A DNA stretch of 64,000 bases from Bigelowiella natans CCMP2755 (GCA_000320545.1 ADNK01001386.1:124001-188000), one strand, 5' to 3'; positions 16,347 to 22,157 are shown, numbered from the stretch's first letter. The notes: a model not told the origin generated them from the sequence alone. Numbers and translations are program-made.

Positions 16347-16941
16347 CGTGAATGGAGGGTGTGCACTCGAATAGTGGGTATTTGCAGTTTAAGCTCGGAA
16401 GAATAACGCCGTTTTTATCCAGAATACATCCTAATTTGATGTCGCCTCGCCCCTCGTATCATACATGTACGACCGCTGTGGGAGCGCTCACATTTTGGGA
16501 TATTCCTAGATCTACGGCGAGGCAAGAAACGGAAGCAAACGAGGCAAAAAAGGGATGGGATTTTGAGTAAAAATAGTACAAAAATCGAAATATGCAAACA
16601 AATACGGGTATGACATGCGGATGGTAACGACTGGCAACAGCCAGAGCTGCCAGGGGAATAGGAAGAAGAACGGCAGCTGTACACGACGCGTATTTGCATT
16701 GCTGCATTTTCATATTCACTTGTTCATCTGCTATCTAATCGCCAGTTCGCATAATTCCCCTCCCTGTGGGAGATTCTTGCGTTCGGTAGGACGTGCGACA
16801 TATCGAAGGCTTGGGGTGCTCCTCATTGCCTTCTTCCGGCCATCGAAGTAAACACTTGTTGTTCTCTACCAGACACCTTTTACATACTGCGCGAAACCTT
16901 GTCTGTGGAACACCAGATGCATCCTATTGCCTCAAGATAAG

Positions 16942-17641
16942 ATGGTATCGAAGTCCTCTCACACCCCTCAGTGGTCCTTCTGGACGGCACCGCTTCTGAT
17001 TGGAATTCTGAGCGTTGGAGCAGGCTATTTGGGATGGGGCTCCTTTTGGTTTCCGAGAGGGTCAAGTGGGCGAGCAGCGGAGCGATGTGGAATGGGGTCG
17101 AATGAACTAGAATTGAATGGGAGCTGGGACGAAAAGCAAGGCTTTGTGTCATGCTTGAGACCCACTTCCAAGCAATGTCAGAAAATGAAGACCAAACATC
17201 GGACGTATCAATATAAGTATGTGTGCCACAACAAGTCTTGCATCGAGCATGGCCATAGGATGAGGGATGGAGGGGACTTTTTGCCGCTCGGTGATCCCAA
17301 ATCCGACATCGCGACAAGCTATGAGGACTTCAAACAAGAGAATTGCGAAGAAGTCTACGAGCATATTACCGACGTCACGCACCTCCCCACGCCAATTCGG
17401 GAGTTTCAGTGCGATGAGGAAAATTTCAATGCTGCGGTGAAGTTAGTTCAACAAGGAATAAGGTATAGCAGACCACTTGTCCTTAAAGGATGTATGAAGG
17501 ACGTTCCAGCCATCAAGAAATGGATTGAGCCAGGGTAGTTTTATTCATCCTACTCTATAAGAATACAATCCATTCTATTGACGCTGTATTCCATTGTAAA
17601 TGTGCCACTCTGGGTGCGAGTGCATCTGCATGTGCGTGGTC

Positions 17642-17716
<75 letters not shown>

Positions 17717-18887
17717 AAATGTGAGTTTGTCGTGTTTGCTATAGTTTTTCACTAATAGAAGACTTTCGTCTCGTTCTTAGATATCTGGAAGGGCGGGATG
17801 AATTCTCAGCTTTATTCTCTGAGGACGTCAATGCAGCAGGGCAGCGCATTGTTCCCGAAGATCTACTCGGCGATTTACTGCCATCTGCAAACTCCTCGGA
17901 TCTGAGCACCCCCTTCACAGAATTCCTCCGGAAGTTTCGCCATAAGAACTATGTGTGGACCAGCAAGGGCGGCCGCCGTGCGCGCACACACTTCGGCACA
18001 TTTCCCAACCTCCATCTGATGGTCTCGGAGCAGAAGACATGGTGGATTGCCTCGCCCGCCTTTGCGAAACACCTATATATTGATTTCGTTGACGAGGAAT
18101 GCCCTGGCATGGTCTCGGGGTCCAAGAGCTTTGGTTGCGACGACTTTGGCTGCTACCAGTACATACCTTTCTGGGATCGGGAGGTGTGCATCTCTCGTTG
18201 GCCGCGTGTAAAAGACGTGCAATGGCAAACAACGGTGCTCTCCCCCGGCGATGTACTGCTCGTGCCAGCCTTTTGGTTCCACAATGTGTGGCATCATCCT
18301 GTGACGCGTAAGGGCAAGAACATCGCTGTGACCTTCATCCGCCAGCAAATGGTAGAAGTCGTAGTAATATATACGGTAGTTTGGTAGTTTTAGAGAAGAG
18401 AGAATAGTAGATGTGCTAGTTGGTGGTCAAAGTTATCTTTATTGCAATTTCATATAAATAAATAAATATATATATATATATATATATATAAACATATAAC
18501 ATAAATATTTATATATAACATTTCAAGGGCATACTAAAAAACAAAAATTATGGTACGTCGTAATTAAGTATGGTACACGTCGTATGTGCATCAGTTGCTG
18601 AAATGCTTTGGACATATCGTAGAACATGCCGGATTCCCGCTTTTCCGAAGATGTCATCAATTTTTATCGGTGAGAACCAAAGGATTCATTCATTCAGCCC
18701 AATCAGTAGCAGCGGATGACAAATAACAACTTTTCGTGAGTTGACGTTAATTTTTTCTTTTCCCTTCGTCAGAGATCACGTGGAGGGATCCGTTCGAATA
18801 TCGAAAGTAGATTCTATTGCATACGGAAGAGCCCCGGATAGGCGTAAACGCAGTGATCAAAGTCGGAATAATGACGGTTTAGACTGA
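16942..18887 (+). CDS. JmjC / cupin-like 2-oxoglutarate Fe(II) oxygenase with an N-terminal signal/anchor
   Basis: Hydrophobic N-terminus WSFWTAPLLIGILSVGAGYLGW; PLVLKGC..VPAIKKW; WTSKGGRRARTHFGTFPNLHLMVSEQKTWWIA; VLSPGDVLLVPAFWFHNV. The last two exons (18613-18887) are inferred from phase. Confidence 0.85.
17646..17714. repeat. (TA)n(TG)n compound microsatellite in a JmjC intron; representative of dozens of intronic (AG)n/(CA)n/(AGT)n/(CAT)n/(AAG)n tracts
   Basis: Directly visible. Similar tracts at 7345-7425, 12953-13004, 39890 region, 45585-45648 and 54366-54405. Confidence 0.95.
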
Positions 18888-19099
18888 AATTGTCCCCGGA
18901 TCATCGTGTCGCAGGGATTTGCAACTCCTGCGGGCAAATTTACACAATCGATCTTAATGTAGTCACTGCAGCAAGCGACGTAATTATTCCTAGTCTACTT
19001 TCAGTAGAGAGTAAAAAAATGCATTTTCATAGAATTGTATGTAAAACACCTCAGAAAAAAAGTTAGTCCTTCTTTCCAAAAGCAATAAAAATGAAACAA

Positions 19100-20029: not shown

Positions 20030-20166
20030 TTACAATCTACTCCGCCTCTTGATAAATTGGCGATCTGCTTCTTTCCGATTTCCACTCTCCACGTCGTTGC
20101 ATGAGCCATGTATTTTTCCATGGTCGTCATCATCATCATCATTGTCGACTTGGCACCTACTACCAT

Positions 20167-20200
<34 letters not shown>

Positions 20201-22157
20201 GCTACTGCTACTGCTACTACTTCTACTTGATGATGGGAAAATATCATGGTCGTTGTCGCTGTTGAAATCGTCTTGCTCATCCACAAATGCTATCACAACT
20301 GAAGTGTCGTCTAACTTCCCACCGACAAATAAGTAGCCATCTCGTGCAGCCGCTACAGAGAAGGGCGATCGGATGGTGGCGCTTTGGCCCAGTTCCTGTG
20401 CAAAGAGGGCAAGGTTTCTTGCCGACTGCTGCGCACTCATCTCCTTTTTGCGACTCTGTTCAACTACGCTAATGATATCGTCATCAAACACATTGTCAAA
20501 TAGCCCATCCGTCCCCAGCACAACAGCATCCCCAGCTTGTAGCTCTAGCTCGTAGAGGTCGGCCATGGAAGGTGAGTCGTTGTCCTTACCGGATCCAATC
20601 TGGAATGGGAAGTTGAACGAGTGCTGCTGCGGGGGCGATTTTATCAACATTTTGCGGTCTCGGATGACTGCAAAGCCGCTGTCGCCGAGATTCACAGCGC
20701 GCATGCAGGAGCCATGGAATGAGGCCAAGCATACAGTGCAACTACCGGGGTCATTCGTCGCCTGGTGTGCACGGACTAGCACCTTGGGGCAACGGCACAA
20801 CCGCCACCAAATAAGAAGAAGAAGAAGAAGAAGAAGAAGAACAACAACAACAACAACAACACAGTTTTAGCTTCTACGACGACAAGCTACTCTGCAGTTT
20901 GGGTCGACTGACAGCAATTCCTTAATTTCAGGTTTTGTTTATTTTCGCAGCTGTATTTATCATTGATGATGCAAAACGAGGATGGTAATGTTTTTTACGT
21001 CAAAAGCAGTCATATCGTTTGACAAACTATTTCACATTTGTAACCATCTGTTGTTGTTTTATTTTTTTCTGTCTCCATTTTCTGTCTGTTCGTCAGCCTA
21101 CCTTCAACAACCCCGCTACCGAGGGGATCCAGAGGGGGGGGGCACTGCTCTCCTCCGCTATGGCGTCGGCATCTTCTTGTTCTTTGACCTTGTTTGTGAA
21201 GATGGTGGAATCACCGTTTTCACGGAAGAAACTTGAAACCTTTTGAGCATTGATCATAAGGCTGCGAGCGTAGAGACCTGCCGACGGGGATTGATTAGTG
21301 AGAATTGTTCTCGTAGGGGGTTATTTCATCATGAGCGGGCGCGTGTGATACGTGTGTGCAACGGGTTCTTGTGTCACGAAGATGGTAGGTTAAATAATGA
21401 ATAAGCATGGTATTTACGAGCACGAAGAATGTTCAAGATCTACCGGCATCAATGCCTTTCTCCGCCCAGCCCCCGACTCCATCAGCGACGCCAATCATCC
21501 CCGATTTAGTGCACACGAATGCTGCATCCTCTCCCTGTTCATCATAGTTGTAGGTTGAAGCAGTGAAGCCAAGGTCTACATTAGGGTAAGCAAACCGAAG
21601 TACGCACGCATGACATACCCCGTTCCTCTTATCTGGGTGCGGCAGGATAGAAACTCCGAAATCGAATCTATCGTATGTGGGGATAATCATGATCGAGTCT
21701 TTTGTTCAGTAGCTCCACAATAAGCGCGAGCGACATAACAAACCAAGTTGGCAGACCTAAGTTTCCGGTTTGGTTTCTCTTCAAATTTTCCAGACTTAGG
21801 TCCTCCATGCATAGCACGACGCTTAATGCGTGATACCCCCCCTCGTCGTCTACGAGGTGTCATCGCAGCAGCGGTGAAGCTGGTGGTGGTGCATCTATTT
21901 GCCCTGGTGGAGAGCAGTCTAGGTCGATGCCGCTGCGAGGCCATCCATCGGAGACACGAGTAAGATGAAGACGTCCTGTTGGTATATACCAAGCTTCTCA
22001 TTCGAGCAGGCCGAACAAACCACGAACAAGCGCCACAAAGTAAAAAGCGCTGGTTGTTATGAGACCTCCCCTTCCCCGCTCGAACACGCGCAAATTCACC
22101 AGCAGGTAAATACATATTCTTTCCAAACTTAAATCTCCGAATCGAAAAGAATTTCAC
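20030..22157 (-). CDS. PPTC7: PP2C-family phosphatase, PTC7/PPTC7 type, with a basic N-terminal extension
   Basis: ILPHPDK, GEDAAF, GVADGVGGWAEKGIDAG|LYARSLM, GSCTVC, NLGDSGF, QQHSFNFPFQIG, GTDGLFDN, GGKLDDTSVV. The 5' start is uncertain. Confidence 0.92.

What the first reader, a model, noticed from the sequence alone, without database searches (positions are those of the whole stretch)
17950..18300. JmjC oxygenase with H-x-G instead of H-x-D: candidate halogenase-type iron site
Seen: RTH-F-G-TFPN (codons 17989-17997) aligns with the JmjC/cupin-8 motif PLH-Y-D-PYHN. The downstream Asn, the 2OG-binding Lys (EQK) and the distal His (WFHNV) are retained; only the carboxylate ligand is replaced by Gly. 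Established: Fe/2OG halogenases (WelO5 and BesD use HxG, SyrB2 uses HxA) free this position for halide binding. The protein also has an N-terminal signal/anchor. Inference: a secretory-pathway halogenase-like, or otherwise re-tuned, JmjC enzyme.
Basis: partly seen in the sequence, partly recalled or inferred. Interest (0 to 1): 0.7.

Follow-up and report, generated by a model that had tools for sequence, protein, structure and literature searches.

The report
Secretory JmjC oxygenase lacking iron-binding aspartate
The marine alga Bigelowiella natans expresses a membrane-anchored JmjC-type iron enzyme in which the usual iron-binding aspartate is a glycine that selection has kept since before two algal genera split, so it is a natural two-histidine oxygenase: most likely still a hydroxylase, only possibly a halogenase.

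Summary
Codons 17989-17997 read His-Phe-Gly in exon 2 of an expressed four-exon gene. This gene is B. natans protein model 74723 (441 aa). It carries a Cupin_8/JmjC domain, and the Gly aligns with the iron-binding Asp of TYW5, JMJD7 and FIH.

The Gly is neither an error nor a recent change:
- DNA and transcript assemblies agree on it.
- The Chlorarachnion reptans orthologue, an environmental orthologue and a B. natans paralogue all have Gly, encoded by GGC, GGA, GGG and GGT.
- All 24 other family members aligned at this column have Asp.

Both His ligands, the Asn and the 2OG-binding Lys are kept, and the HxG branches are no longer than those of the HxD sisters. A decaying pseudo-enzyme is therefore unlikely.

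Several features point to the secretory pathway:
- N-terminal signal or anchor segments.
- Invariant cysteines and a conserved Cys-x-Asn-x-Ser/Thr-Cys motif.
- Thioredoxin-fused relatives.

The halogenase reading rests on the motif alone. Human AspH, an ER enzyme with a natural HxG...H site, and the FIH D201G variant are both hydroxylases that do not halogenate.

My best reading is an active two-His protein hydroxylase (0.5). Pseudo-enzyme gets 0.25 and halogenase 0.12. I class it as a new variant of a known kind.

The parts
16652..19054 (+). Transcribed unit: four exons and three GT..AG introns
   Evidence: Transcript contigs of runs X15 and X16 lie on 16652/16661-17534, 17781-18351, 18623-18669 and 18773-19051/19054 with no mismatches.
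16942..17534 (+). Coding exon 1 (residues 1-197 plus two bases of codon 198): signal anchor and Cys-rich N-terminal region
   Evidence: This is the first in-frame ATG. The context is GATAAGATGG and the 5' UTR holds a single 7-codon upstream ORF. The joined translation equals database protein P0120, JGI B. natans model 74723.
16972..17052 (+). Hydrophobic signal-anchor segment, residues 11-37
   Evidence: Hydropathy maximum of 1.47 over 19 residues. Orthologues and paralogues also begin with hydrophobic N-termini.
17224..17241 (+). Conserved C-x-N-x-S/T-C motif (C95-H-N-K-S-C100), which holds an N-glycosylation sequon
   Evidence: The alignment shows CHNKSC, CHNVSC, CRNRTC and CRNRTC, and KNKAC in P0007. 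L006 reads CHNISC.
17535..17780 (+). Intron 1 (GT..AG), containing (TA)n(TG)n microsatellites
   Evidence: Splice joint seen in X15 and X16; sequence.
17781..18351 (+). Coding exon 2 (residues 198-388): Cupin_8/JmjC catalytic core
   Evidence: Pfam Cupin_8 E=3.8e-15. The AF2 model has pLDDT 90.6. The top fold matches are FIH, JMJD5, JMJD7 and TYW5.
17989..17997 (+). His268-Phe269-Gly270: proximal iron ligand, with Gly in place of the facial-triad Asp
   Evidence: The Gly codon is GGC here, GGA in C. reptans, GGG in L006 and GGT in the paralogue L002.
18007..18009 (+). Asn274, equivalent to FIH Asn205 (His+6)
   Evidence: Nearly invariant column N215 of alignment A2. The FIH numbering is from my own knowledge.
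18034..18036 (+). Lys283, the predicted binder of the 2OG C5-carboxylate (His+15, as FIH Lys214)
   Evidence: Invariant in A1 (K283) and nearly invariant in A2. It aligns with the 'GKK' Lys of TYW5 and the 'GEK' Lys of JMJD7.
18100..18156 (+). Family-specific Cys-rich insert, C305-P-G...G-C317-D..G-C322-Y323
   Evidence: These columns are invariant in A1. The segment aligns with a Cys-free stretch of JMJD7.
18280..18282 (+). His365, the distal iron ligand in 'PAFWFHNV'
   Evidence: Invariant in A1 and nearly invariant in A2. It aligns with FIH 'YWWHHI' and TYW5 'LWFHNV'.
18352..18622 (+). Intron 2 (GT..AG), retained in some assembled transcripts
   Evidence: The joint is seen in X15 and X16. 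P0002 and P0122 end in ...QQMVEVVVIYTVVW, which is read-through to the TAG at 18385-18387.
18623..18669 (+). Coding exon 3 (47 nt)
   Evidence: It encodes NMPDSRFSEDVINFY, which is conserved in relatives.
18773..18887 (+). Coding part of exon 4, with stop codon TGA at 18885-18887

Best explanation
The gene encodes a 441-aa type II-anchored protein whose catalytic domain most likely lies in the lumen of the secretory pathway. It belongs to a small, Cys-rich, JMJD7/FIH-like branch of the Cupin_8 (JmjC) Fe(II)/2-oxoglutarate oxygenases found in marine protists.

In the common ancestor of one chlorarachniophyte subclade, the facial-triad Asp mutated to Gly (GAY to GGY, a single transition). The Gly has been held by purifying selection ever since. 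That subclade contains this gene, its Chlorarachnion and environmental orthologues, and the B. natans paralogue 136262.

The product most likely remains an active oxygenase whose iron is held by only two histidines, His268 and His365. 2OG would bind through Lys283 and Asn274. The vacated coordination site would be filled by water, by chloride, or by a substrate carboxylate.

By analogy with AspH and FIH D201G, the default reaction is hydroxylation of a side chain of a luminal or secreted protein.

Shown here: gene structure, expression, fold family, the Gly and its conservation, and retention of the other site residues.

Inferred: luminal location, catalytic competence, the reaction outcome, and a protein substrate.
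For: Real and expressed:
- DNA and spliced transcript contigs are identical to the window.
- The protein is present in MMETSP and JGI records as B. natans model 74723.
- Environmental metatranscriptome contigs carry 5 synonymous changes and 1 conservative change in the coding sequence.

Gly under selection:
- THFGTF is present in C. reptans P0119/P0123, which is 53-56% identical overall.
- It is present in environmental contig L006.
- The paralogue P0004/L002 has H-L-G.
- All four Gly codons are used across these sequences.
- All 24 other family members have Asp at this column. No second clade-specific substitution accompanies the change.

Not degenerating:
- His268, Asn274, Lys283 and His365 are invariant in the four HxG sequences.
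- Root-to-tip paths from the clade node are 0.59-0.68 for HxG members, against 0.79-1.06 for the HxD sisters.
- A truly degenerate relative, P0009 (Q-I-T), has a path of 1.60.

Fold:
- The AF2 model has pLDDT 90.6, with the site strands at pLDDT 96 or above.
- The best structural matches are FIH, JMJD5, JMJD7 and TYW5.
- The best profile match is JMJD7, E=8.7e-36.

Precedent that a two-His site can be active:
- FIH D201G is catalytically viable, whereas D201A is not (PDB 3d8c and 2ilm; PMC6817910; PMC10915816). This matches the Gly-specific constraint seen here.
- AspH is a natural HXG...H hydroxylase anchored in the ER.

Secretory location:
- N-terminal hydrophobic segments in all full-length clade members.
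- Invariant cysteines and an N-x-S/T sequon.
- Relatives P0013 and P0018 are fused to thioredoxin (PDI-like) domains.
Against: - There is no biochemical evidence of any kind.
- In other 2OG oxygenases, loss of the carboxylate usually inactivates the enzyme. Examples are PAHX D177A/G and FLS D230G.
- I could not inspect the coordinates of the model. I therefore do not know whether a second-sphere residue holds a water, as Asp721 does in AspH, or whether a halide pocket exists.
- In chlorarachniophytes a signal peptide can also lead to the plastid or the periplastidial compartment, so the destination is not settled.
- Monophyly of the four HxG sequences has weak support (69/30).
- Only three lineages plus one paralogue were sampled.
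Confidence: 0.5

Rival explanations
1. It is a catalytically dead pseudo-enzyme. The Cupin_8 barrel is kept as a binding module, for example a chaperone-like or lectin-like protein of the ER, as has been suggested for JMJD8. The Gly simply abolishes tight iron binding.
For: - Loss of the facial-triad carboxylate inactivates most 2OG oxygenases that have been tested (PAHX D177A/G; FLS D230G and 8 of 10 plant 2ODD D-to-G/A mutants).
- JMJD8 is an ER-lumen JmjC protein with a non-canonical residue at this position, and its authors suspect it is not a hydroxylase.
- B. natans keeps an HxD paralogue (P0003/P0127) that could carry the ancestral activity.
- The family contains at least one clearly degenerate member, P0009.
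Against: - A dead site should drift. Here both His ligands, Asn274 and Lys283 are invariant across paralogues that are only about 39% identical.
- Gly itself is fixed while its codon changes, with four different codons used.
- The branches are not lengthened.
- The one true degenerate, P0009, lost several site residues at once and sits on a long branch.
Confidence: 0.25
2. It is a true Fe(II)/2OG halogenase in the JmjC fold. Chloride or bromide, both abundant in sea water, binds iron at the site freed by Gly270 and is transferred to a substrate radical.
For: - The HxG...H motif is necessary for all known Fe/2OG halogenases and is strictly conserved here.
- The organism is marine.
- Natural Asp-to-Gly switching after gene duplication is how the plant halogenase DAH arose, next to HxD paralogues. 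The paralogue pattern here is similar.
- The title of Chaplin et al. 2018 reports that chloride supports O2 activation in FIH D201G. I saw this title only in the reference list.
Against: - The motif is not sufficient. AspH (natural HXG...H) and FIH D201G hydroxylate and do not halogenate.
- Single D-to-G/A changes rarely give halogenation, and when they do, hydroxylation still dominates.
- No JmjC/Cupin_8 halogenase came up in the literature searched here.
- No homology to SyrB2-, WelO5- or BesD-type families was detected.
- No clade-specific second-sphere changes accompany the Gly.
Confidence: 0.12
3. It is an artefact: a sequencing or assembly error, a wrong gene model, or a strain-specific recent mutation.
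For: None found. Some gene callers give shorter models: P0121 and P0122 start at Met51, and P0002 and P0122 retain intron 2.
Against: - An independent DNA run and two transcript assemblies are identical to the window.
- All cluster members carry THFGTF.
- Orthologues in another genus and in an environmental sample carry Gly with different codons.
Confidence: 0.01

Closest known systems
JMJD7, (3S)-lysyl hydroxylase (PDB 5nfn, 5nfo, 4qu2, 7yxg)
   Same: It is the nearest solved relative by profile search, E=8.7e-36 over about 280 positions. It shares the Cupin_8 double-stranded beta-helix and the same H...N...K...H spacing. It acts on protein side chains.
   Different: JMJD7 has the canonical H-x-D (LHKDHYEN). 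It has no signal anchor, no Cys-rich insert (C-P-G...G-C-D..G-C-Y) and no CxNxSC motif. It is cytosolic or nuclear (my own knowledge). JMJD7 itself was not in my trees. There the family sits on a very long branch (1.9-4.0 substitutions per site) from its nearest Cupin_8 search hits, so orthology to JMJD7 remains untested.
FIH D201G variant (PDB 3d8c)
   Same: It has the same fold subfamily, and FIH is the top Foldseek hit. It has the same H-x-G...H two-histidine site, and it is catalytically viable as a hydroxylase while D201A is not.
   Different: It is an engineered human cytosolic enzyme. Here the Gly is natural, old and selected, and the protein carries secretory-pathway features.
Human aspartate/asparagine beta-hydroxylase (AspH)
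   Same: It has a natural HXG...H two-His iron site. It is a type II ER-membrane-anchored 2OG oxygenase with a luminal catalytic domain. It hydroxylates disulfide-rich secretory proteins and does not halogenate.
   Different: It belongs to a different 2OG-oxygenase family with TPR domains. No Pfam Asp_Arg_Hydrox match was found here. The resemblance is convergent.
Fe(II)/2OG halogenases (SyrB2 and CytC3 with HxA; WelO5, BesD and plant DAH with HxG)
   Same: The carboxylate ligand is replaced by a small residue. For DAH, the change arose as D-to-G in a duplicated eukaryotic hydroxylase gene.
   Different: They belong to other 2OG families, not JmjC/Cupin_8. Their substrates are small molecules or carrier-bound. 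Halogenation also needs second-sphere and substrate-positioning features that cannot be shown here.
JMJD8, and the animal 'secreted JMJD5-like' family of Iyer et al. 2010
   Same: These are JmjC-only proteins of the FIH/TYW5/JMJD5/JMJD7 clade that carry a signal peptide. JMJD8 is in the ER lumen and has a non-canonical residue at the Asp position. The secreted family has conserved disulfide cysteines and is predicted to hydroxylate cell-surface proteins.
   Different: JMJD8 has H-x-H, not H-x-G. Both are animal families. This one is from chlorarachniophytes and other marine protists and has its own cysteine pattern.

Membership tests
Cupin_8 / JmjC Fe(II)-2OG oxygenase superfamily | Significant match to the Pfam Cupin_8 (PF13621) model | tested here: met
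   67.2 bits for the whole protein and 56.9 bits for exon 2, against a cut-off of 27.4.
Cupin_8 / JmjC Fe(II)-2OG oxygenase superfamily | Double-stranded beta-helix fold closest to JmjC hydroxylases | tested here: met
   The AF2 model has pLDDT 90.6 and pTM 0.90. All of the top 50 Foldseek matches are FIH, JMJD5, JMJD7 or TYW5, with E about 1e-12.
Cupin_8 / JmjC Fe(II)-2OG oxygenase superfamily | [quoted passage not shown] | tested here: not met
   His268 and His365 are present, but the carboxylate is Gly270. It is a fold member with a variant metal site.
Cupin_8 / JmjC Fe(II)-2OG oxygenase superfamily | 2OG-binding Lys on the strand after the HxD, and Asn at His+6 | tested here: met
   Lys283 and Asn274 are invariant or nearly invariant and align with the TYW5 and JMJD7 residues.
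Fe(II)/2OG halogenases | HxG/A...H motif, with an open site for halide | tested here: met
   H-F-G...H365, conserved in the orthologues and one paralogue.
Fe(II)/2OG halogenases | Homology to a characterised halogenase lineage (SyrB2/PhyH-like, WelO5-like, BesD-like, DAH/2ODD) | tested here: not met
   Only Cupin_8 and JmjC models match in Pfam. No halogenase appeared among the sequence hits to solved structures or the listed top 50 fold hits.
Fe(II)/2OG halogenases | Halide bound to iron and halide-dependent C-X bond formation | not testable with these tools
   This needs biochemistry or crystallography.
AspH-type two-His hydroxylases (Pfam Asp_Arg_Hydrox) | Sequence membership in the AspH family | tested here: not met
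   No such Pfam match at E<=0.01. The similarity lies in the site type and the cellular compartment only.
JMJD7 orthologues | Groups with JMJD7 to the exclusion of other Cupin_8 families | tested here: inconclusive
   JMJD7 is the best PDB profile hit. JMJD7 itself was not in my trees. There the family is separated from its nearest Cupin_8 search hits by a branch of 1.9-4.0 substitutions per site, and it has its own signal, cysteines and insert.
Secretory-pathway luminal enzyme | N-terminal signal or anchor, plus luminal hallmarks (paired cysteines, N-glycosylation sequon) | tested here: met
   Hydrophobic N-termini in P0120, P0123, P0004, P0007, P0127, P0006, P0129 and L006. Invariant Cys residues and CxN-x-S/T-C. 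No dedicated signal-peptide predictor was available. Plastid or periplastidial routing is not excluded.

The most novel reading that the evidence does not exclude
This is the first JmjC-fold halogenase, or an obligately halide-dependent oxygenase. It would act on proteins or glycoconjugates inside the secretory pathway of a marine alga. It would have evolved by a single Asp-to-Gly switch after gene duplication, in parallel with the plant halogenase DAH.
Probability: 0.12. Interest if true: 0.9.

Novelty: new variant of a known kind. Interest (0 to 1): 0.55.

Why it matters
Two-histidine iron sites in 2OG oxygenases are known from bacterial halogenases, from one plant halogenase, and from one human hydroxylase (AspH). 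In the JmjC fold they are known only from an engineered FIH mutant.

This gene family offers a natural, evolutionarily stable JmjC example. An HxD paralogue in the same genome serves as a built-in control, which makes a clean system for two questions. What does a two-His site buy an enzyme? And what else is needed for halogenation as against hydroxylation?

It also points to a family of Cys-rich, signal-bearing Cupin_8 enzymes in marine protists, some of them fused to thioredoxin domains. I found no description of this family in the two paper searches aimed at it. Its members are candidate luminal protein hydroxylases outside animals.

Tried and rejected
1. Sequencing error or recent mutation: rejected.

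2. The single-ORF gene model ending at 18387: rejected. Transcripts splice at 18351/18623 and 18669/18773, giving a conserved C-terminus. The 399-aa form retains an intron.

3. The word-index protein search was nearly blind here. It returned 1, 2 and 3 hits and missed the known paralogues. The family picture therefore rests on the exhaustive representative search, which is clustered at 50%, so closer orthologues are hidden.

4. The metagenome contig scan gave only two loci. I could not survey other chlorarachniophyte transcriptomes such as Lotharella, Gymnochlora, Partenskyella or Norrisiella.

5. I looked for a compensating carboxylate or other clade-specific change next to the Gly. None was found. 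Glu281 is shared with the HxD sisters, and by my reasoning from FIH geometry it points away from the metal.

6. Modelling the metal site: not done. The structure tool returns no coordinates and has no 2OG ligand.

7. Taxon names for other family members: the cluster look-up gave none.

8. Hewitson 2008 and Chaplin 2018 are not in the held library. I cite them only through papers that describe or list them.

9. No hand-joined spliced protein was sent to any search tool. Whole-protein queries used the database entries P0002 and P0120 that the tools returned. Exons were joined only inside a script, to check that the translation equals P0120.

Full report
**What is there**

The window is eukaryotic DNA with GT..AG introns and microsatellites. 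Cluster look-up identifies the gene product as Bigelowiella natans JGI model 74723 (P0120, 441 aa), a chlorarachniophyte alga protein.

Transcript contigs from two runs (X15, X16) lie on four exons: 16652-17534, 17781-18351, 18623-18669 and 18773 to about 19054. They show no mismatches. The CDS runs 16942-17534, 17781-18351, 18623-18669 and 18773-18887, and translates to exactly P0120.

Its apparent C-terminus, VEVVVIYTVVW, is read-through into intron 2. Some assembled transcripts do retain that intron (P0002, P0122).

Codons 17989-17997 are CAC TTC GGC, which is His268-Phe269-Gly270.

- Exon 2 alone hits Pfam Cupin_8 at E=3.8e-15, and JmjC more weakly.
- phmmer aligns THFGTFPNLHLMVSEQK with TYW5 THYDVMDNLLIQVTGKK.
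- A family profile aligns the same column with the Asp of JMJD7 LHKDHYEN.

Asn274, Lys283 and the distal His365 (PAFWFHNV) are in place. A DNA assembly (X1) and the two transcript assemblies agree with the window across the whole of exon 2.

Environmental metatranscriptome contigs (X18) do not cover the Gly codon. Elsewhere in the coding sequence they carry five synonymous changes and one conservative change, F13Y in the anchor. This pattern is consistent with purifying selection.

**Is the Gly conserved?**

- An exhaustive HMMER search of 1.84 billion representatives found 118 relatives, 38 of them at E<1e-10.
- In the aligned motif, only the window protein and P0004 have H-x-G.
- P0004 is a second B. 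natans gene, model 136262 at G000:C2256, with C-H-L-G-T-F-D-N.
- A third B. natans paralogue, model 131568 at C2954, has the canonical T-H-F-D-N-F-D-N.
- The Chlorarachnion reptans orthologue (P0119/P0123, 53-56% identical) reads RTHFGTFPNLH.
- An environmental contig, L006 (57% identical), reads RTHFGTFTNLH.

The four Gly codons are GGC, GGT, GGA and GGG. The residue is therefore held while the codon drifts. In the family alignment the column is G in 4 of 4 clade members and D in 24 of 24 others. No other column is diagnostic in the same way.

Within the B. natans genome I could align 15 distinct Cupin_8 motif exons. Eleven are HxD, two are HxH and two are HxG.

**Phylogeny**

A careful maximum-likelihood tree places the sequences as follows.

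- The family sits on a long branch from its nearest Cupin_8 relatives.
- Within it there is a well-supported clade of eight (100/95).
- That clade holds the HFG trio, the HLG paralogue, and an HxD group (P0003, P0006, P0008, P0009; 95/89).

In the best tree the four HxG sequences form one group, but support is weak (69/30). A single Asp-to-Gly event followed by duplication is therefore the simplest reading, though it is not proven.

Root-to-tip paths from the clade node are 0.59-0.68 for HxG members and 0.79-1.06 for the HxD sisters. The one clearly degenerate relative, P0009 (Q-I-T at the motif), has a path of 1.60. The HxG genes do not behave like genes released from constraint.

**Structure**

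AlphaFold2 with a 42-sequence family alignment gives pLDDT 90.6 and pTM 0.90. The strands carrying His268/Gly270, Lys283 and His365 have pLDDT of 96 or more.

The Foldseek top 50 are all FIH, JMJD5, JMJD7 or TYW5. They include the FIH D201G and D201A crystal structures. The profile search against PDB sequences ranks JMJD7 first at 8.7e-36, followed by JMJD5, TYW5 and FIH.

I could not inspect coordinates, so the metal site itself was not modelled.

**Location**

All of this is inference from sequence.

- Residues 11-37 form a hydrophobic stretch after a short polar N-terminus, which looks like a type II signal anchor.
- Orthologues and paralogues likewise start with hydrophobic signal-like segments.
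- The family has invariant cysteines: C-P-G...G-C-D..G-C-Y in an insert that lacks them in JMJD7, plus C-x-N-x-S/T-C containing an N-glycosylation sequon.
- Two more distant members are fused to thioredoxin (PDI-like) domains.

Together these argue for a luminal or extracellular catalytic domain. One caveat applies. In chlorarachniophytes a signal peptide also begins the route to the plastid and the periplastidial compartment (my own knowledge), and the C. reptans orthologue has a basic linker after its signal.

**Mechanism and comparison**

The motif is necessary for Fe/2OG halogenases, but the literature shows it is not sufficient.

- Human AspH has a natural HXG...H site and is anchored in the ER membrane. 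It hydroxylates EGF domains and does not halogenate, even with added halides or pseudohalides (PMC12816917, PMC13168262, PMC6817910).
- FIH is in the same fold subfamily as this protein. It stays catalytically viable as D201G but not as D201A (PMC6817910, PMC10915816).
- Single D-to-G/A swaps rarely create halogenation. They failed in FLS and in 8 of 10 other plant 2ODDs, and in the two that worked hydroxylation still dominated (bioRxiv 10.1101/2024.12.09.627616; 10.1101/2023.05.25.542349).

The strict requirement for Gly seen here mirrors the FIH result. It argues for a working site that needs the space for a water, a chloride, or a substrate carboxylate.

I therefore rank the readings as follows.

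| Reading | Probability |
|---|---|
| Active two-His oxygenase, default hydroxylase of a luminal or secreted protein | 0.5 |
| Pseudo-enzyme or binding module | 0.25 |
| True halogenase | 0.12 |
| Artefact | about 0.01 |
| Other outcomes | remainder |

**Novelty**

I found no paper on this B. natans protein. A search for 'JmjC', 'halogenase' and 'HxG' turned up no natural H-x-G JmjC enzyme.

Secreted or ER JmjC proteins are known in animals. JMJD8 has H-x-H, and there is a 'secreted JMJD5-like' family.

This is best described as a new variant of a known kind. It is a natural counterpart of FIH D201G, convergent with AspH, in a protist secretory Cupin_8 family that I did not find described in those searches.

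**Limits**

- Only three lineages plus one paralogue carry the evidence for conservation.
- The word-index search was almost blind.
- No signal-peptide predictor was available.
- No model coordinates were available.
- There is no biochemistry.

Noticed in passing
window 18352-18387 (start of intron 2): Several database proteins for this gene (P0002 at 399 aa, P0122 at 349 aa) end in ...QQMVEVVVIYTVVW. This is read-through of the unspliced intron 2 up to the TAG at 18385-18387. An intron-retaining transcript therefore exists in assemblies. It would remove the conserved C-terminal helix NMPDSRFSEDVINFYR.
   Followed up: partly
window 17650-17716 and 18447-18503: There are (TA)n(TG)n and (AT)n microsatellites inside introns 1 and 2. 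Short-read contigs of the DNA run break at both. This may relate to the RY-alternating DNA that another note on this window describes in intergenic spacers.
   Followed up: no
window 16917-16940: The 290-nt 5' UTR holds a single upstream ATG with a 7-codon ORF (MHPIASR). It is out of frame and ends just before the main ATG at 16942.
   Followed up: no
proteins P0013 and P0018 (relatives from marine assemblies): Members of the same Cys-rich Cupin_8 family carry an N-terminal thioredoxin domain with WCxxC (Pfam PF00085, E=3e-7 and 4e-11). This recalls the pairing of PDI with collagen prolyl hydroxylase.
   Followed up: partly
protein P0009 (relative; ENA contig of 42.9 kb): This is a degenerate family member. 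Its motif is Q-I-T-S-A-D-T instead of H-F-D-T-F-D-N, and it sits on a long branch (0.96, against 0.15 for its sister). It is a likely true pseudo-enzyme and a useful contrast to the HxG clade.
   Followed up: partly
L014 (G000:C2665:37387-41115) and L024 (G000:C451:51829-55404): Two other B. natans Cupin_8 genes have H-x-H at the same position (PMHHHMY and PLHFHNY). This is the variant reported for the ER-lumen protein JMJD8.
   Followed up: no
L003/L004 (G000:C2954), protein P0127: The HxD paralogue has a Lys/Arg-rich insertion of about 20 residues, KDKDKDKKRKKKKRRKKKKQKR, directly after the distal-His motif. The other family members lack it.
   Followed up: no
L006:590-615: The environmental orthologue contig has a frame shift just upstream of the catalytic core. 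For that reason its gene was called as a 146-aa fragment (P0005). It may be an assembly error or a real lesion.
   Followed up: no
window 20030-20800, minus strand: This is a 256-aa ORF with PP2C-like motifs, judged by eye (GDSGFAV..., LGTDGLFDN). It ends in a run of about 25 serines followed by an acidic run. It converges tail-to-tail with the JmjC gene.
   Followed up: no
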